Source: Obrimoposthia wandeli
Lineage: Eukaryota
Length of the DNA stretch: 64,000 bases
Direction of reading: 5' to 3'
Assembly: GCA_977020255.1 (NCBI GenBank)
Contig: CDROCS010006702.1
Coordinates: forward strand, 1 to 64,000
Position 1 is the first letter of the stretch, and the number at the start of each line of letters is the position of its first letter. Positions 54,693-61,218 of this stretch are shown here, in pieces. A program made the position numbers and the translations under genes. A model generated the notes under the pieces. The model did not search any database. It saw nothing but the letters and a program-made list of their open reading frames with translations, and was not told the DNA's origin.

Positions 54693-55082
54693 CGATACTA
54701 CTTTGTAAATAGCAGTTCCCTCATCTCTTAATAGCGATTTTTATTAGCTCTTTTTACGTTCATTTCTCTTTTTCCGATTTTCTTACATTAATACTCAAAA
54801 ACATATTAGCAACCATTAAGAGACGCTATATAATTTTATTTATTTTGCCTTAATTTATTAATGTATCCATTAAGAAACAATTATTATTTAAACGCTTAAA
54901 TTCAAACCAATTCTATAATAAAAACCATTTAAATCAATTATTTAAATATCAAATTCAAACAAACTAGGAATATTAATTAAACATTAACAAATATTAATTA
55001 ACGCTTGCCTTTGTTCAGCTTAAACTTATACTTTGTTCACGTTTCATTCATAAACAAAGTAAGCAATAAGCCAAGGAGCATT

Positions 55083-55865
55083 ATGTTAAATTTTTTAAAA
55101 GTGACTGCGCTAATCAGTAGCCTCTTAATTGCTTTAACAGCTCACGCAAAATCGAATGATTGGCAAAACCCAGCTTACATATCTAACAGCTTTATTGAAG
55201 TGGCTTTAGGTAACGAATACGGTAAAGGCGATCTGCGCATTCGTAAATGGGTTAAAGCGATCAAAATATTTGTACAGCACGATGTGGGTGACAAGCAATT
55301 ACAAGATCAATTAGTCGATGCGCATATTCAACATTTAAGTAACATTACCCAATTAAAAATTCAGCGTGTCAGCAACATTAAGCAAGCTAATCTTAAATTC
55401 TTTTTTACTGATCAAAAAAGCATGAAGCGTTTATCAGATAAACATTCGGGTAAAAGCGTAGCGCGCGTAAATACGACAAAAACTTGTATCGCAAATATCA
55501 AGCTAAATGCAAAAGCAGAAGTAAACAGTGCCCAAATCTACATCCCTGTAGATTTCGCTTACCAAAATGGCAGCCTTGTTGGCTGTATCGTTGAAGAGCT
55601 GACCCAAGTGTTAGGTCTACCTCGTGATTCAGATAAGGTTTTCCCTTCTATTTTTAACGACAAATCAACTGACCAATTATTAACAGGTTTAGATGAGACG
55701 CTAATACGCATTTTATATAACCCTAAGGTCAAAGCAGGGATGAGAAAGAACGCACTAGCGCGTGTTTTAAAACCCATTATTAACCGTTTAAACGCTAAAG
55801 GCATGATTTCAACAGCAAACCTAAGAGTGAGAAAAACACAACTCTACGCTATGCTCGGTTATTAA
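55083..55865 (+). CDS. DUF2927-family exported protein (zincin-like)
   Basis: AGGAG RBS before ATG 55083, signal peptide; IRKWVKAIKI, CIVEELTQVLGLPRDS, PSIFND, LTGLD motifs. Confidence 0.75.
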   Translation: MLNFLKVTALISSLLIALTAHAKSNDWQNPAYISNSFIEVALGNEYGKGDLRIRKWVKAIKIFVQHDVGDKQLQDQLVDAHIQHLSNITQLKIQRVSNIKQANLKFFFTDQKSMKRLSDKHSGKSVARVNTTKTCIANIKLNAKAEVNSAQIYIPVDFAYQNGSLVGCIVEELTQVLGLPRDSDKVFPSIFNDKSTDQLLTGLDETLIRILYNPKVKAGMRKNALARVLKPIINRLNAKGMISTANLRVRKTQLYAMLGY

Positions 55866-55916
55866 TTTTAGCTTTAGATTAAGACTAATATCCACTCGAT
55901 TATTATACATTACTCC

Positions 55917-56309
55917 GTAAGCGTCTAACCAACCACATGCTATCCAGCTCGCAGCCACCTCCATTACACTAACTTCTTTATTTAAAGAGTAGTGAAAACT
56001 TCACGATAGATCAGCGCTATGAGATAAGGCAAAAGCAATCCAAAGAGATACTGAGTCAGTTGCGCAAGTGGCTCGATAAAGCGATTGCTAATACTCCTCC
56101 TAAAACAGCAATCGGTAAAGCAGTGCAGTATTTACAGAGTCAATGGTTTCAATTAACAGGCTATGTTGAGATTGGAGAATACCCAATGGATTAGAGCCGT
56201 ATGCGTACCTTAAACTGCTATTTACAGAGCAGCCTTTAGCTGAAACGATGGAAGACATCGATCAGCTTCTTCCTTGGAGATGCAAGGGTGTAGTTGGTTA
56301 GGCGCTTAC
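55917..56309 (+). mobile_element. Internally deleted IS66-family element (left, 393 bp)
   Basis: TIRs GTAAGCGTCTAACCAACCACA / TGTAGTTGGTTAGGCGCTTAC; TnpC fragments QRYEIRQKQSK...KTAIGKAVQYL...EYPMD and NGLEPYAYL...DQLLPW. Confidence 0.9.
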
Positions 56310-56383
56310 GGTTCATTCATACATAGTAGTGATAAACAGAGCATGCCGACAGCGTTCAAACCGACAAGCTCCACCAAGCTGGG

Positions 56384-57412
56384 TTAAGGGGTAGTATAGT
56401 TGCGAGCAATCTTACGCAGCTCTTTCAACGCTCCTGCTGCATCAACATTTCGACCGGCTACACGCTTAAGATATTCTTCATCCATACCTTTAATCAGGGT
56501 CTGGAATTCAATATCGATAGGGTCACCCGGCTTAACCTCAAGGATAGAAACGCCAGCTTCTTTCGCAATTTTCAGACCTTCGGTGTCGCCTGCATCCCAA
56601 GCCCGACCGGCCAGAGCTGAGAGTTTCTCGCCGGAAACAGCCATAATAGCTTTCTGGTCAACTGGGCTCAGGCCAGACATAAAGTCCGGGTTAAGAAATA
56701 TTGAGAAGCTCATGGTATACATACCACCTGGCAACAGCACCAGCTGTTTGGTGACCTCTTTGAGGCGCAAAGTTTTTTGCTCACCGGCAGGAATAAAAAC
56801 GCCGTCTACTACCCGTTGCTGCATCATCTCATACACTTTAGTTGCTGGTGCCCCAACCGGAGTGACCCCCATGCGCTCACCTAACTCAGACTGGATGCCG
56901 CCACCCAGGCGGATCTTACGGCCTTTCAAATCCGCCAGGGAGCTGATAGGTTCAGCCAGATGAATCTGGCCCGGGCCATGGGTAAACAATGCCGCCAGAG
57001 TCAGACCATCATGCTCATTTGCTTGCTTGTAGTATTTATTGCTTACCCGCCACAGAGCAACCGATGCCGCTTCTGCACTGGCATTCAGATTAGGCAGCTC
57101 TGCCGATTCGGTGAGTTTAAAACGCCCTGGGATATAGCCGTGCACACTCCAACTGGCATCGACCACGCCGTCTTCAACCAGCTCGAACATGGTTTTCGGA
57201 TGCCCCATACCGTATTCAATGACCATTTTCACCCGGCCATCGGTGGCTTCATCTATCCATTTCCCCCAAGTATCGAGCACAACTGCGTTCTGAGGATGGG
57301 TTGGCGGAAGCCAGCTGGCAACCCGCATCTTAGTTTCAGCCAAAGCGCTGTTCGATAAAGCCACACCCAATGCAAGGCAGGCTAGTGGTTTGAAAAGAGT
57401 TTTCAATTTCAT
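56384..57412 (-). CDS. dctP: TRAP substrate-binding protein (orphan; cargo of the composite element)
   Basis: Sec signal peptide; MRVASWLPPTHP, FTHGPG, DLKGRKIR, VVDG; about 57% GC in a 60-nt spot count. Confidence 0.9.
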   Translation of the reverse strand: MKLKTLFKPLACLALGVALSNSALAETKMRVASWLPPTHPQNAVVLDTWGKWIDEATDGRVKMVIEYGMGHPKTMFELVEDGVVDASWSVHGYIPGRFKLTESAELPNLNASAEAASVALWRVSNKYYKQANEHDGLTLAALFTHGPGQIHLAEPISSLADLKGRKIRLGGGIQSELGERMGVTPVGAPATKVYEMMQQRVVDGVFIPAGEQKTLRLKEVTKQLVLLPGGMYTMSFSIFLNPDFMSGLSPVDQKAIMAVSGEKLSALAGRAWDAGDTEGLKIAKEAGVSILEVKPGDPIDIEFQTLIKGMDEEYLKRVAGRNVDAAGALKELRKIARNYTTP

Positions 57413-57853
57413 AATAAGGACCTTCTTTTGATTATTATGCCTTATATAAGGCTTTGGTTTCGGTAATTAAAGGGATTAGTTTAGGCTTGCTTACGGTGGC
57501 GTGATCGCAGTTATTTCTAGGTAAAAAGCAACTCACACCACTGCAATCATGATTTTGAATAAATAAAAATATATATTGATTATGACATCCCATACTTAAA
57601 CCTAGAATTAGCAGTTGGATTCCTTTTTAGGGGTTGATAAATTTTGTTGTAAGTAGGCGCATATTGCAGTAAATGTTTGTTCTCTTTAAAAAATATGTAA
57701 TGCCCCTACAACGAAATTTATCAAGTATAAAAGGGAATAGCTCACTCAACGAGTGAGGTGTCGACGAATACTTTATTAAGTGTTCAACTGTTGACTCTAG
57801 ATTAAAAGAGACGCGATATTGAACATAATATAATAATATGGAATAGGCGTTTT

Positions 57854-58825
57854 TTAGCGTTTTGAAATACCATTACGCCCAGGGAAATCTGCAGCCAGCT
57901 CTCTAGCATTTGGCATCTTCAGCCATAATCTATACAAATGTCGTCTGCGTTCAAGCTCGTCGTAATCTTCGAAACTGGTGCGGGAATGGAAGATGGCATA
58001 GTTATTTGCGAATTGGATATCACCGGGTTCCATCATCATATCTAAACGAATATCTAGATTATTTAAAATCGAATCAATAAGGTCTAAAGCTTCAACTTCT
58101 ACATTCGATAACGGCAAGCCAGCATTTTCCTGGGCTATCTCTATATATTGGCGCAAATATCGAGCGCTTAGCTTACCCTTGTGATGACTAAAAATTGGTG
58201 TTAAGCCAACGTCACCATCATTAAGATGCTCTAACAGAAAAAGGCGGTGAAGAAGCCCTAGATACTCTGGGTGTTTTTCCAGGATTTCATTATAGAGCGT
58301 CATCGCACTTGAAAGGCTGCTCATACCTCCTGACTTCGCTTTACGTAGACAAAGTAAACCAACAACATCCGACAAATCGGCGTGATAAGGCAGATATTCA
58401 TTCGTCTCATACACACGAACGTGCTTTGTATCTATTGCCTCAATATTTTTCACATCCCCTAACATGTCGCCTTTTAAGTTTTGAGAAACCGGAGTACCCA
58501 TATGAAGGCCTAGACCGTAGTAAATAATGGCTGCTTCAGCATCCGAATATCGTTCAATTGGCAAGCCGCGAATGACTATGAAACCCTTACCATTTTCCAG
58601 CTCTTCATTAAAGTAACTGATCTCTTCTGAGAGTTGAGTAATTGGGAAGTCTTCTTTAGTAAAATTGGGGACTTGTAGCCCTTTTTGCTTGATGTTTTCT
58701 AAAGCTTTTTCGAGAACGTTAATTGATTCATCAGACCAATGATAAATCCATGAACCATCATCCTTTATATCCTTTCCTTTCCATGCTGATGGACCTTCAA
58801 TTTTTTCTTTAAGAATGACGCTCAT
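57854..58825 (-). CDS. TauD/TfdA-family Fe(II)/2-oxoglutarate dioxygenase (cargo)
   Basis: HxD motif in PYHADLSDVVGLLC, GDIQFANN...HSRTSF, RHLYRLWL. Confidence 0.88.
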   Translation of the reverse strand: MSVILKEKIEGPSAWKGKDIKDDGSWIYHWSDESINVLEKALENIKQKGLQVPNFTKEDFPITQLSEEISYFNEELENGKGFIVIRGLPIERYSDAEAAIIYYGLGLHMGTPVSQNLKGDMLGDVKNIEAIDTKHVRVYETNEYLPYHADLSDVVGLLCLRKAKSGGMSSLSSAMTLYNEILEKHPEYLGLLHRLFLLEHLNDGDVGLTPIFSHHKGKLSARYLRQYIEIAQENAGLPLSNVEVEALDLIDSILNNLDIRLDMMMEPGDIQFANNYAIFHSRTSFEDYDELERRRHLYRLWLKMPNARELAADFPGRNGISKR

Positions 58826-58980
58826 TATCTATTCCTCTAAAAAGCCATATTGTTATTATTTTATGCTGCCTACAAAGGCTGGTGACTCAACCAACAGGGC
58901 CGTATCAAGCCAGATGAGAAGCTACTTATATTATTATAATTGTGATTTCCTATTAAAAAAAATACATAATAAATATAGCT

Positions 58981-59003
58981 AGCCATATAAAAAAAGTATG
59001 GCT
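58981..59003. promoter_or_regulatory. Candidate LysR recognition site (T-N11-A palindrome)
   Basis: AGCCATA-N9-TATGGCT between the divergent dioxygenase and LysR genes. Confidence 0.55.
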
Positions 59004-59034
59004 TGGACTTTAGTGTCGTTATGGGAGCGCGAAG

Positions 59035-59979
59035 ATGAAACTCAATCAGCTTAAATATTTTCATAAGATCGCCGAGCTGGGCAGCGTTTCAGCTGCTGCC
59101 CGGGAGCTTTTTATCGCTCAGCCAGCCCTGAGTAATCAGGTCTCTGCGCTGGAAAAAGAGCTTGAAGTCGCATTGTTCATACGCACAGTGAAAGGGGTCC
59201 AGCTGACCCCCGCCGGGGAAAAGCTTCTGCACCATGCTGGCCTGATTCTGCGCCAGGTTGAAAACGCCCGTGCCGATGTAATTTCCGATGCCGTCTCGCC
59301 TCGGGGTGAGGTACGGCTAGTGGTGGATGCGTCCAAGGCCTACACCCTGTTGCCGCTGCTGGTCACCGAAACTGCCCGGCGCTTTCCCGAGATGCAGCTT
59401 AACGTGTCTGATGCGATGAGTCTGGTGGCAGCCCAGCATATAGCCGATGGTAAGGTCGATCTGGGCTTGATCCCCAATGCGGCGGACCTGAGTAATGTTG
59501 AGGTGCTGCCAGTGTATCGCGAGTCGATGTACCTGGTGGGTAAAAATCTGGCTGGGAAGGGTTCGAGGCATAATGGCCAGACGATTTTGTTTGAACGGCT
59601 TTCGGAATACCCCCTGGTGGCACCGTCTCGACCGCACAACATCCGCATGCATATCGAACAAGCTGCCCTGGAAGCCCGACGACCGCTGAATATTCAATAC
59701 GAACAGAATACGGGGTTGGGCCTGCGTTGCCTAATCAACAACGGTATCGCCAACGCTATTATTCCACGTGATGTGATGAACGCCGAGTTGCAGCGAGGTG
59801 AGCTTGACGCCCTGAAAGTTATCCAGCCTTCGATCGATCGGATTCACTCACTAGTACGCTTGAAGGACCGTCCGGTGACCACCGCCTGCCGTGCAATGGA
59901 AGGGTTGATTATTGAGCTCATAGGAACCTTGTGTAGACAGAATTTACTCAATGGCGATGCGATGATTCGGCCGAAGTAA
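59035..59979 (+). CDS. LysR-family regulator, Nac-like (cargo)
   Basis: MKLNQLKYF...AQPALSNQVSALE HTH; about 57% GC in a spot count; stop TAA is within the IS66 TIR. Confidence 0.9.
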   Translation: MKLNQLKYFHKIAELGSVSAAARELFIAQPALSNQVSALEKELEVALFIRTVKGVQLTPAGEKLLHHAGLILRQVENARADVISDAVSPRGEVRLVVDASKAYTLLPLLVTETARRFPEMQLNVSDAMSLVAAQHIADGKVDLGLIPNAADLSNVEVLPVYRESMYLVGKNLAGKGSRHNGQTILFERLSEYPLVAPSRPHNIRMHIEQAALEARRPLNIQYEQNTGLGLRCLINNGIANAIIPRDVMNAELQRGELDALKVIQPSIDRIHSLVRLKDRPVTTACRAMEGLIIELIGTLCRQNLLNGDAMIRPK

Positions 59980-60376
59980 GCGCCTAACCAACCACATACT
60001 ATCCAGCTCACAGCCTCCTCCATTACACTTACTTCTTTATTTAAGAAGTAGTGTATGAATCGTAGATCATCATCAGATTGGAAAGTAATCGTTAAACAGC
60101 AACTCAGTAGTGGGCTCAGTGCCTCTGCTTTTTTGCCGTGAGCACAACTTCAATCAAAAACATTTCAGCTACTACACAGGTAAGCTTAAAAAAACCAGAG
60201 CCTGCCTTTACCAGATTAAAGCCAAAATCTATCGATACACCGATAACCTCAAATGTTCATACGCTGATGTGCAATGGTGTAAGTTTTCAATGTGAGGCAA
60301 TTAATCCGTTTAGGCTGTTGGGCACATGCGCGGCGTAAGTTTATGGATGCAAGGGTATAGTTGGTTAGGTACTTAC
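59976..60376 (+). mobile_element. Internally deleted IS66-family element (right, 401 bp)
   Basis: TIRs GTAAGCGCCTAACCAACCACA / TATAGTTGGTTAGGTACTTAC; frameshifted TnpA (ATG 60055, WKVIVKQQLSSGLSASAF-CREH...) and TnpC fragment LGCWAHARRKFMDA (60310-60351). Confidence 0.9.
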
Positions 60377-60489
60377 ATTACTCCTTGATCACTTCTTCTC
60401 TCTCATGAAGTTATTTTCATTAAGATATTTTGCGCCCCGCCTTTATTTAAAGGATAATTCCTACTTCTAAATTTGATACGAGCATATCG

Positions 60490-61218
60490 ATGAAAAAAGT
60501 AGCTATCGTTACCGGCGGATCTAAAGGCATAGGTTTTGCCATTGTTAAACTATTTATAGCATCAAATTACACCGTTTATAATTTAGATATAAACACCGGA
60601 GAACAAGGCATACATATTCAATGTGATATGAGTGATTTTTCACAAGTTCAGCAAAGTATTGCGCAAGTGATTGAAAAAGAGCAACGTATTGACACACTCA
60701 TTTGTAATGCGGGTGTTCACCTATCAGCCAATATAGAAGACACTACAGAACATGCATTTGATCAGCTCTTCGCTATTAATGTGAAAGGCGCCTATGCAGC
60801 GATACAAGCAACGCTGGCCACTATGAAGCAACAAGAATCAGGCTCGATTGTGATCATTGCATCTGATCAATCAGTCATTGGTAAAACCAATTCATTTGCG
60901 TACAACTTATCAAAACATGCCCTCGCCTCTCTTTGTAAAACCACTGCTTTAGATTACGCTGCCTTTAATATTCGGGTCAATGCGCTGTGCCCTGGCACAA
61001 TAGAGACACCGCTATATCACAATGCTATTGAACGCTACTGCCAGCAATCAGGAGCCGACAAAGAGCAAGTGCATCAACATGAAGCTTCAATGCAACCGTT
61101 AGGGCGCCTAGGCAAGCCTGATGAAGTAGCGCAATACGCACTATTTTTAGCCGGTGAGAACGCCAGCTTTGTGACGGGTAGTTTGCAACTAATTGACGGC
61201 GGCTACACCACAGGTTGA
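60490..61218 (+). CDS. SDR-family oxidoreductase
   Basis: TGGSKGIG, CNAG, YNLSK (YxxxK), NALCPG, GRLG, DGG. Confidence 0.93.
   Translation: MKKVAIVTGGSKGIGFAIVKLFIASNYTVYNLDINTGEQGIHIQCDMSDFSQVQQSIAQVIEKEQRIDTLICNAGVHLSANIEDTTEHAFDQLFAINVKGAYAAIQATLATMKQQESGSIVIIASDQSVIGKTNSFAYNLSKHALASLCKTTALDYAAFNIRVNALCPGTIETPLYHNAIERYCQQSGADKEQVHQHEASMQPLGRLGKPDEVAQYALFLAGENASFVTGSLQLIDGGYTTG

What the first reader, a model, noticed from the sequence alone, without database searches (positions are those of the whole stretch)
55909..60384. Composite transposon built from two transposase-dead IS66 miniatures, with an intact 8-bp target duplication
Seen: two ~400-bp direct-orientation elements with ~21-bp GTAA-type TIRs bracket 3,666 bp of cargo. 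The identical 8-mer ATTACTCC lies just outside the two outer ends, and the inner junctions (GGTTCATT, CGGCCGAA) do not match. Established: IS66 ends begin GTAA, make 8-bp duplications and need TnpB/TnpC. Inference: the 4,460-bp block inserted as one unit, either mobilised in trans as a non-autonomous mini-IS66 gene shuttle or as a full composite that later decayed. A metabolic cassette carried by paired mini-IS66 ends is the best candidate for an undescribed mobile system here.
Basis: partly seen in the sequence, partly recalled or inferred. Interest (0 to 1): 0.85.

Follow-up and report, generated by a model that had tools for sequence, protein, structure and literature searches.

The report
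Decayed IS66 composite transposon with cargo
Two broken remnants of IS66-type jumping genes bracket a three-gene nutrient-use cassette taken from an Amphritea-like bacterium, and the 4.46-kb block was pasted as one piece between two host genes; this is a worn-out example of a well-known kind of mobile element, not a new mobile system.

Summary
Two same-orientation IS66 remnants (55917-56309, 393 bp; 59976-60376, 401 bp) flank 3,666 bp of cargo. The only two ATTACTCC octamers in the window sit exactly at the outer ends.

Unit insertion is well supported:
- Three relatives have DUF2927 directly followed by the SDR gene.
- The cargo LysR and DctP genes are 51-54% GC in a 39.7% GC host.
- The cargo matches a conserved Amphritea-type operon (LysR / TauD-GlcDEF-DctP), here lacking GlcDEF.
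- Full-length 2.27-kb IS66 relatives with the same ends make perfect 8-bp duplications.

The claim of an undescribed mobile system is not supported. The architecture is a classical composite transposon. Cargo bounded by miniature elements and moved in trans is already described for Tn3-derived elements (TIME-COMPs).

The two miniatures are not copies of one MITE. They are different multi-deletion wrecks that share only 78 + 31 bp, at about 90% identity. The outer right end carries changes at two near-invariant tip positions. No second copy was found. Whether the IS copies were whole or already miniature when the block moved stays open.

Caveat: an independent assembly of the same sample shows a different interior for the left remnant.

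Verdict: real, ordinary, a fossil; new member of a known kind.

The parts
55005..55865 (+). Host gene on the left of the insertion: DUF2927 protein
   Evidence: Pfam PF11150, E 4e-55. Orthologues at 69-82% identity are followed directly by the SDR gene in L001, L002 and a JGI contig.
55909..55916 (.). Left copy of the 8-bp target-site duplication ATTACTCC
   Evidence: it abuts the outer left end.
55917..56309 (+). Left IS66 remnant (393 bp). It consists of LE plus leader (IS positions 1 to about 78), TnpC aa about 357-426, and TnpC aa about 466-502 plus RE. There is no TnpA, no TnpB and no catalytic core.
   Evidence: TIRs. tblastn against full-length IS66 of L006 and L046. blastn mapping onto L046, L040 and L132. 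Pfam PF03050 E 1e-12 and PF13817 E 8e-11. An alternative interior exists in the Logan contig.
56310..59975 (.). Cargo, 3,666 bp, of foreign origin
   Evidence: GC of LysR is 0.54 and of DctP 0.51, against a window mean of 0.397. It is 88% identical in nucleotides over 2,132 bp and 78% over 1,112 bp to the L030 operon.
56384..57412 (-). TRAP-type solute-binding protein (DctP family), full length, with no DctQM partner in the cargo
   Evidence: Pfam PF03480. 88% aa identity over the whole length to L030 and L031 DctP.
57413..57853 (.). Spacer carrying the scar of the GlcDEF deletion (between about 57497 and 57441) and a ~200-bp AT-rich insert (57600-57801) with an 18-bp inverted repeat
   Evidence: blastn: window 57599-57497 aligns to L030 11021-11127, just upstream of glcD. 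Window 57441 onward aligns to L030 15022 onward, just upstream of dctP. L030 11127-15022 has no counterpart. The inverted repeat is I3.
57854..58825 (-). TauD/TfdA-family 2-oxoglutarate dioxygenase, full length
   Evidence: Pfam PF02668. 94% aa identity to P0122 (L030) and 91% to Amphritea balenae.
59035..59979 (+). LysR-type regulator, full length, divergent from TauD. Its stop codon TAA lies in the first bases (GTAAG) of the right element's LE.
   Evidence: Pfam PF00126 and PF03466. 88-89% aa identity to L030 and L031 LysR, with C-termini aligning residue for residue. The native L031 sequence also reads GAGTAAG at the stop, so the exact junction is ambiguous by up to 5 bp.
59976..60376 (+). 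Right IS66 remnant (401 bp). It consists of LE, the N-terminal part of TnpA with a premature stop at 60139 (IS positions 1 to about 315), TnpC aa about 308-329, and the last 31 bp including RE. There is no TnpB.
   Evidence: Pfam PF03050 on the 22-aa piece, E 3e-5. The RE tip reads GTAAGTA against GTAAGCG in 165 of 166 related ends.
60377..60384 (.). Right copy of the 8-bp target-site duplication ATTACTCC
   Evidence: It is spanned by a separate Logan contig, 60341-60467.
60490..61218 (+). Host gene on the right of the insertion: short-chain dehydrogenase, first gene of the SDR-amidohydrolase-Cys/Met-PLP group
   Evidence: Pfam PF13561 and PF00106. The same gene order is found in L001, L002 and the JGI contig.

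Best explanation
This is a fossil IS66-family composite transposon. In a donor related to Amphritea (about 50% GC), two IS66-family elements came to lie at the very edges of a LysR / TauD-GlcDEF-DctP operon, one at the lysR stop codon and one 74 bp past dctP. An IS66 transposase then acted on the outermost ends, the LE of the left copy and the RE of the right copy. It pasted the whole IS-operon-IS unit into the 156-bp spacer between the DUF2927 and SDR genes of this 40% GC host and duplicated the 8-bp target ATTACTCC. Shown here: the anatomy, the duplication, the foreign origin, the empty site at gene-order level, and the 8-bp duplication habit of this IS66 subgroup. Inferred: that transposition rather than recombination made the insertion, and that most of the decay came afterwards. 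That decay comprises at least two internal deletions in each IS copy, loss of GlcDEF from the cargo, and point changes in the tip of the outer right end. Today the block encodes no transposase and has a damaged outer end, so it is probably immobile. The three cargo genes remain intact.
For: (1) Identical 8-mers lie exactly at the outer ends and not at the inner junctions. (2) Seven full-length relatives (2.27-2.51 kb) with the same 21-bp ends carry perfect 8-bp duplications: L040, L132, L101, L060, L008, L009 and L013. These relatives encode TnpA, TnpB and TnpC. (3) The relatives L001 (DUF2927 82% identical), L002 and a JGI contig have GntR-aminotransferase / DUF2927 / SDR / amidohydrolase / Cys-Met-PLP with nothing between DUF2927 and SDR. 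(4) The cargo GC and its internal GC pattern, including a low-GC TauD, copy those of L030 and L031. aa identity is 88-94% and nucleotide identity 78-88%. (5) The IS ends hug the operon, so they capture exactly one regulatory unit. (6) Signs of decay: the two remnants have different deletion patterns. The RE tip is changed at positions 6 and 7, which are C and G in 165 of 166 related ends. GlcDEF is missing while the spacers on both sides of it are kept. (7) Depth over the right remnant and over the left remnant's LE is flat at the single-copy level in the source sample. No element with the same deletion structure occurs among 135 loci carrying this TIR.
Against: No close relative exists, so the empty site cannot be read at base level. 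The best DUF2927 match is 82% aa and the intergenic DNA does not align. No second copy of the block was found, so mobility is inferred from one insertion. The shared ends of the two remnants differ by 9-10%, which is more than expected for two fresh copies of one IS. Either the insertion is old or the two flanking elements were different isoforms from the start. The order of the deletions relative to transposition is not determined. The interior of the left remnant differs between the window and an independent assembly of the same sample.
Confidence: 0.62

Rival explanations
1. The block is a trans-mobilised pair of miniature IS66 elements, an IS66 counterpart of TIME-COMPs. The two remnants were already transposase-less when the block moved, and a full-length IS66 elsewhere in the cell supplied TnpA/B/C, which recognised the outer LE and RE.
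For: All four TIRs survive despite at least four internal deletions. The source sample holds contigs at 41x and 11.5x, against 6.8x for this locus, that continue into full-length IS66 TnpC sequence. One of them is about 95% identical to the left remnant. Another note of this scan reports an IS66 transposase fragment elsewhere in the assembly (s1-208478, unchecked). A 980-bp internally deleted derivative that keeps both ends exists in Marinomonas algarum (L022). The principle is proven for Tn3-derived miniatures (PMC4133298, PMC13367494).
Against: The two miniatures are not members of one homogeneous family, because their interiors are unrelated. No other copy of either was seen in the sample or in 135 related loci. 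The deeper IS66 contigs were not shown to have matching ends or to belong to the same genome, and no contig at 90% or more was laid on the LE/TnpA part. The outer RE tip is mutated at near-invariant positions. No experiment shows IS66 acting in trans on miniatures.
Confidence: 0.2
2. The block arose in two steps without composite transposition. A single IS66 inserted at ATTACTCC. Later a circular or linear DNA carrying an IS66 copy plus the operon recombined homologously with the resident IS. The cargo ended up between two hybrid IS copies, and the original duplication stayed at the outside.
For: This gives the same end state: outer duplication and unmatched inner junctions. The 9-10% difference between the shared ends fits two IS copies of different origin. 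Multicopy IS66 in the sample offers recombination partners, and the left remnant's interior shows a conversion-like patch.
Against: This needs more events. Homologous integration through an IS is well documented for IS26-type elements but not for IS66 (my own knowledge). Nothing in the sequence distinguishes hybrid IS copies from non-hybrid ones.
Confidence: 0.13
3. The pattern is chance or artefact. The matching octamers are coincidental, or the arrangement is a mis-assembly across repeated IS ends.
For: ATTACTCC is AT-rich, and two copies somewhere in 64 kb is unremarkable. The left remnant's interior is assembled differently by Logan.
Against: A match at two fixed positions has a probability of about 2e-5. 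One Logan contig runs from the left flank through both remnants and the cargo to 60370, and another covers the RE, the duplication and the right flank. The lysR/LE junction is also present, 527 of 528 bases identical, in a 2018 run of another study.
Confidence: 0.03

Closest known systems
Classical composite transposons (Tn5, Tn10, Tn9 type; definition as in PMC10969869)
   Same: Two IS copies flank accessory genes. The target duplication brackets the whole unit and not each IS. The flanking copies may be defective; IS50L of Tn5 is defective.
   Different: Here both flanking copies are wrecks of about 400 bp with no transposase at all. They belong to the IS66 family and carry a catabolic/regulatory cassette rather than a resistance gene.
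[quoted passage not shown]
   Same: The cargo is bracketed by two short non-autonomous elements that keep their TIRs. Movement would need a transposase supplied in trans.
   Different: TIMEs are multicopy, homogeneous families, and their trans-mobilisation has been shown experimentally. Here the two miniatures are unlike each other inside, appear single-copy, and nothing shows they moved in the miniature state. The transposase family is different: IS66 TnpABC against the Tn3 DDE transposase.
IS66-family elements that carry or flank cargo: tIS66 such as ISPa75-fosZ (PMC12888890), and the 8-kb guuH/bguH region flanked by IS66 on Pseudomonas plasmids (10.1101/2025.04.28.651035)
   Same: The family is IS66, with GTAAGCG-type ends and 8-bp duplications, and it is associated with passenger or catabolic genes.
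   Different: In tIS66 the passenger sits inside a single intact IS. Here the cargo lies between two separate remnants, each with two ends. The Pseudomonas case involves full IS66 copies on plasmids.
Full-length IS66 of marine Gammaproteobacteria with the same TIR (L046 9706-11973, L040, L132; 2,268 bp; unnamed metagenome copies)
   Same: The 21-bp ends are the same. TnpC fragments are 79-86% aa identical, and the DNA is 72-80% identical over the retained parts.
   Different: These encode TnpA (97 aa), TnpB (118 aa) and TnpC (503 aa). The window's elements retain 17-18% of that length.
E622, a 611-bp MITE of Pseudomonas syringae shown to mobilise a bla gene (cited in PMC10969869; original paper not held)
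   Same: It is a miniature element able to carry a gene when transposase is supplied.
   Different: Its relation to IS66 is only my recollection and was not checked. E622 is multicopy and has long TIRs.

Membership tests
IS66 family insertion sequence (the two remnants) | Terminal inverted repeats of about 20-30 bp beginning GTAAGCG | tested here: met
   All four ends begin GTAAG. Three match GTAAGCGYCTAACCAACYACA with at most 1 mismatch, and the fourth has 3-4 changes. The same ends bound full-length IS66 elements in L006, L046, L040 and L132.
IS66 family insertion sequence (the two remnants) | 8-bp target-site duplication | tested here: met
   ATTACTCC flanks the composite. Seven full-length relatives have perfect 8-bp duplications. 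Neither remnant has a duplication of its own.
IS66 family insertion sequence (the two remnants) | TnpC DDE transposase with PF03050 and the IS66 C-terminal element | tested here: met
   Only fragments are present: PF03050 E 1e-12, PF13817 E 8e-11, PF03050 E 3e-5. They map to TnpC aa 357-426, 466-502 and 308-329 of L046. This is homology, not function.
IS66 family insertion sequence (the two remnants) | Autonomy: intact tnpA, tnpB and tnpC | tested here: not met
   No TnpB trace was found in the window. TnpA is cut short by a premature stop. TnpC lacks the zinc-finger and leucine-zipper domains and most of the DDE domain.
Composite transposon | Two IS copies (here remnants) flank the cargo, with usable outer ends in inverted orientation | tested here: met
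   The outer LE at 55917-55937 and outer RE at 60356-60376 are inverted relative to each other at 82% over 17 nt (I7).
Composite transposon | The target duplication brackets the whole unit and not the individual IS copies | tested here: met
Composite transposon | Empty site in relatives | tested here: met
   Met at gene-order level in three relatives. Base-level comparison is impossible because the spacers do not align.
Composite transposon | Cargo foreign to the host and traceable to a donor locus | tested here: met
Composite transposon | Observed mobility: the same unit at a second site, or excision or insertion products | tested here: inconclusive
   No match in PLSDB plasmids. No joints skipping the block in the contigs of 4 runs. 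The lysR/LE junction seen in a 2018 run (X2) most likely comes from the same bacterium, because a sister run of that study holds host flank sequence.
MITE-bounded composite (TIME-COMP-like) | The flanking miniatures are members of a multicopy, homogeneous non-autonomous family | tested here: not met
   The interiors are unrelated. Contig depth is flat over the right remnant and the left LE (contig depth is a weak measure). No element with the same deletion structure occurs in 135 loci carrying this TIR.
MITE-bounded composite (TIME-COMP-like) | An autonomous partner with matching TIRs in the same genome | tested here: inconclusive
   Deeper contigs with full-length-type TnpC sequence exist in the source sample. 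Their ends and their host genome were not seen, and the rest of the genome was not available.
MITE-bounded composite (TIME-COMP-like) | Transposition of the unit with transposase supplied in trans | not testable with these tools
   This needs a trap-plasmid or mating-out assay.

The most novel reading that the evidence does not exclude
The block moved while its flanking elements were already about 400-bp miniatures, driven by a full-length IS66 elsewhere in the cell. That would make it the first IS66-family counterpart of TIME-COMPs. It would show that TnpA/B/C needs nothing from the element beyond about 80 bp at the left end and about 30 bp at the right end.
Probability: 0.2. Interest if true: 0.5.

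Novelty: new member of a known kind. Interest (0 to 1): 0.3.

Why it matters
It is a clean, datable example of how an IS66 pair lifted exactly one regulatory unit (regulator, enzyme genes, binding protein) out of an Amphritea-like genome. The pair dropped it into an unrelated, AT-richer marine gammaproteobacterium that sits on a bacterial contig of an assembly also holding eukaryotic sequence.

The finding gives a lower bound on what remains when such a transposon dies: all four ends survive, the transposase genes go first, and part of the cargo goes too.

It does not open a new mechanism. The only point of wider interest is the minimal-end question for IS66 transposition, which the two remnants (78 + 31 bp shared) would frame if trans-mobilisation were shown.

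Tried and rejected
- Exact-protein look-up of the SDR gene found nothing on record, so the genome itself is not in that collection.
- The left remnant and the whole block were searched against PLSDB plasmids. Only distant TauD genes matched.
- A 22-mer specific for the two left ends had no hit in the metagenome contigs. The broader 21-mer TIR gave 108 loci, none closer than about 80% to the remnants. The parental IS66 was therefore not found.
- Base-level search for an empty site failed. The spacers of L001 and L002 are too diverged to place ATTACTCC.
- I first read the near-identical lysR/LE junction in run X2 (another organism label, 2018) as possible evidence of spread. I rejected this because a sister run of the same study (X5) holds 7% of the host flank words, so the same bacterium is probably present there at low depth.
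- I first read lysR as truncated by the IS. I rejected this because the C-terminus aligns residue for residue with native LysR, and the native sequence also reads GAGTAAG at the stop.
- The low GC of TauD could suggest a mosaic cargo assembled in this host. I rejected this because the same low-GC TauD sits in the high-GC operon of L030 and L031.
- The E622 paper (PMC3256676) is not held, so its family assignment was not checked.

Full report
**Observation**

The region was read directly and searched for repeats. Two elements in the same orientation lie at 55917-56309 (393 bp) and 59976-60376 (401 bp). Each is bounded by inverted ends of the type GTAAGCGYCTAACCAACYACA. The 21-mer occurs three times in the window with up to 3 mismatches, against none expected in 100 shuffles. 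The fourth end, the outer right one, reads GTAAGTACCTAACCAACTATA and needs more mismatches.

Between the elements lie 3,666 bp. ATTACTCC occurs exactly twice in the 64-kb window, at 55909-55916 and 60377-60384, each touching an outer end. Two copies anywhere in the window is not unusual (40 of 100 shuffles). Identity at two fixed 8-bp positions has a chance of about 2e-5 at this composition (my arithmetic). The inner junction octamers, GGTTCATT and CGGCCGAA, match neither each other nor the outer ones.

**What the two elements are**

They resemble each other only at the ends: 78 bp at the left (91%) and 31 bp at the right (90%). The interiors do not align.

A scan of species-representative genomes and of metagenome contigs for the end motif gave 27 and 108 loci. 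Many hold full-length elements of 2.19-2.51 kb bounded by the same ends.
- L006 and L046 encode the canonical three IS66 proteins. TnpA is 95-97 aa. TnpB is 118 aa (PF05717, E 8e-40). TnpC is 502-503 aa with the leucine-zipper, zinc-finger, DDE_Tnp_IS66 and IS66 C-terminal domains.
- Seven of the full-length copies carry perfect 8-bp target duplications. The 8-bp rule therefore holds for this subgroup.

Mapping the remnants onto the closest full-length copies (L046, L040, L132, L102; 72-80% nucleotide identity) gives the following:
- Left remnant: IS positions 1 to about 78, then TnpC residues about 357-426, then TnpC 466-502 plus the right end.
- Right remnant: IS positions 1 to about 315 (leader plus a TnpA N-terminal part broken by a premature stop at 60139), then TnpC 308-329, then the last 31 bp.

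The fragments hit PF03050 and PF13817. No trace of TnpB is present anywhere in the window. Each remnant has therefore suffered at least two internal deletions, and the deletions differ between the two. These are not two copies of one miniature element.

**Evidence that the block came in as a unit**

The flanking DUF2927 protein has no close relative on record; the best match is 82%. The three nearest contigs whose context could be read are L001, L002 (a 4.9-Mb genome) and a 30-kb JGI contig. All have the order GntR-aminotransferase, DUF2927, SDR, amidohydrolase, Cys/Met-PLP enzyme, with a spacer of only about 200-400 bp between DUF2927 and SDR. Removing 55917-60384 from the window leaves a 156-bp spacer, in line with these. 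The spacers are too diverged to locate the octamer. The empty site is therefore shown at gene-order level, not at base level.

**Origin of the cargo**

The cargo encodes a DctP-family TRAP binding protein (56384-57412, minus strand), a TauD/TfdA dioxygenase (57854-58825, minus strand) and a divergent LysR regulator (59035-59979).

The TauD protein has relatives at 87-94% identity in Amphritea, Neptunomonas and marine metagenomes. In L030 (metagenome contig) and L031 (Amphritea balenae) the locus is LysR, divergently TauD, then three glycolate-oxidase-like genes (GlcD, GlcE, GlcF types), then DctP.

The window's proteins are 88-89% (LysR), 91-94% (TauD) and 88% (DctP) identical to these, over their full lengths. 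The DNA aligns at 88% over 2,132 bp and 78% over 1,112 bp.

The three middle genes are absent. The short spacers just upstream of glcD and just upstream of dctP are both retained (57599-57497 and 57441 onward), so this is a deletion of about 3.9 kb from a five-gene operon.

GC content supports a foreign origin. LysR is 0.54 and DctP 0.51, in a window that averages 0.397. The low GC of TauD (0.40) is also seen in the donor-type loci, at 0.42-0.46 within 0.53-0.57. The cargo is therefore foreign and Amphritea-like.

The IS ends sit tightly around it. The right remnant's first bases provide the lysR stop codon. The native sequence also reads GAGTAAG there, so LysR is complete and the junction is ambiguous by a few bases. 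The left remnant ends 74 bp past dctP.

**Independent support for the assembly, and a caveat**

Logan contigs of the run that holds 97% of the region's words are probably from the source sample. They include one contig that runs from the left flank through both remnants and the cargo to 60370. A second contig covers the right end, the duplication and the flank. That second contig carries two differences. One of them restores C at TIR position 6, so a second haplotype also has the insertion.

Inside the left remnant the Logan contig differs from the window by 18 substitutions (56016-56139) and about 134 extra bases at 56183-56191. This is exactly where the window lacks TnpC residues about 427-465. 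At the 18 positions the window agrees with a 41x contig that continues into full-length TnpC sequence. Either two haplotypes exist (gene conversion by a multicopy IS66), or the window's consensus was influenced by reads of that multicopy element. The ends, junctions and cargo are unaffected (1 difference in 4,188 bases).

A 2018 run from another study holds a 528-bp contig across the lysR/left-end junction with one difference. A sister run of that study holds 7% of the host flank words. I therefore read this as the same bacterium at low depth, not as spread of the element.

**Mechanism**

The most economical reading is a composite transposon. Two IS66 elements landed at the edges of the operon in a donor. 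A transposase acting on the outermost left and right ends then moved the whole unit into ATTACTCC in this host.

What cannot be settled is whether the flanking copies were whole at that time.

Observations favouring later decay:
- The remnants differ in structure.
- Both appear single-copy in the sample, and no element with either deletion pattern occurs among 135 related loci.
- The outer right tip carries T and A at positions 6 and 7, where 165 of 166 related ends have C and G.
- The cargo itself lost 3.9 kb.

Observations favouring movement in the miniature state:
- All four ends survived.
- Deeper IS66 contigs are present in the same sample.
- A 980-bp two-ended derivative exists in Marinomonas algarum (L022).

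A third possibility gives the same end state: a lone IS insertion followed by homologous recombination with an IS-plus-operon molecule. It fits the 9-10% difference between the shared ends.

**Comparison with what is known**

The layout is that of classical composite transposons (definition in PMC10969869). IS66 elements with passenger genes (ISPa75-fosZ and other tIS66, PMC12888890) are reported. So is an IS66-flanked 8-kb catabolic region on Pseudomonas plasmids (10.1101/2025.04.28.651035). Composite structures bounded by two miniature elements and moved in trans are established for Tn3-derived TIMEs (PMC4133298, PMC13367494).

The finding is therefore a new, decayed member of a known kind. 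It fails the defining MITE feature of a homogeneous multicopy family. It fails the autonomy criterion for an IS.

**Verdict**

- Observation confirmed.
- Unit insertion well supported.
- The claim of an undescribed mobile system is not supported.
- Interest is modest.

Noticed in passing
window 56016-56191; read laying: The interior of the left IS66 remnant differs between the window and the Logan contig of the same sample: 18 substitutions and about 134 extra bases. At those positions the window agrees with a 41x multicopy IS66 contig. This is either gene conversion or a polishing artefact.
   Followed up: partly
window 57413-57853; L030 11127-15022; L031: In Amphritea balenae and a metagenome relative the operon is LysR / TauD-GlcD-GlcE-GlcF-DctP. 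The window's copy has lost the three glycolate-oxidase-like genes cleanly and keeps both adjoining spacers. This bears on the scan's separate note about the orphan DctP module.
   Followed up: yes
window 57600-57801: A ~200-bp AT-rich insert lies in the TauD-DctP spacer and is absent from L030 and L031. It contains an 18-bp inverted repeat (57634-57651 / 57707-57724). It is not repeated elsewhere in the window or in any fetched locus.
   Followed up: partly
L144 8001-11277; L141 8001-13502; L032: The same TauD gene (89-92% aa identity) occurs in other genomes without GlcDEF-DctP, and in L144 and L032 without the adjacent LysR. It sits next to IS3- and IS5-type transposase genes. It is low-GC inside high-GC neighbourhoods, so the gene itself looks frequently transferred.
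   Followed up: no
L022 22-1001 (Marinomonas algarum, NZ_JAJATW010000031.1): A 980-bp IS66 derivative has both ends and fragments of TnpA, TnpB and the TnpC C-terminus. It has no target duplication. This is another internally deleted two-ended remnant of the same IS66 subgroup.
   Followed up: partly
L100 4451-4471 and 4544-4564: Two IS66 left ends lie in tandem, 93 bp apart, on a metagenome contig. Many contigs of sample Ga0233426 begin or end about 105-125 bp inside this IS, which points to a high-copy IS66 there.
   Followed up: no
window 56290-56323; read laying, record 4: An 11.5x contig from another IS66 copy matches the left remnant's right end and also the 14 bases beyond it, with 3 mismatches in 34. 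I have no explanation for why the similarity extends past the IS end.
   Followed up: no
The search of earlier findings: Other pieces of the same assembly carry eukaryotic elements (a Polinton-like element and an intron-bearing hAT transposase). This window is therefore a bacterial contig inside a host-plus-microbe assembly.
   Followed up: no
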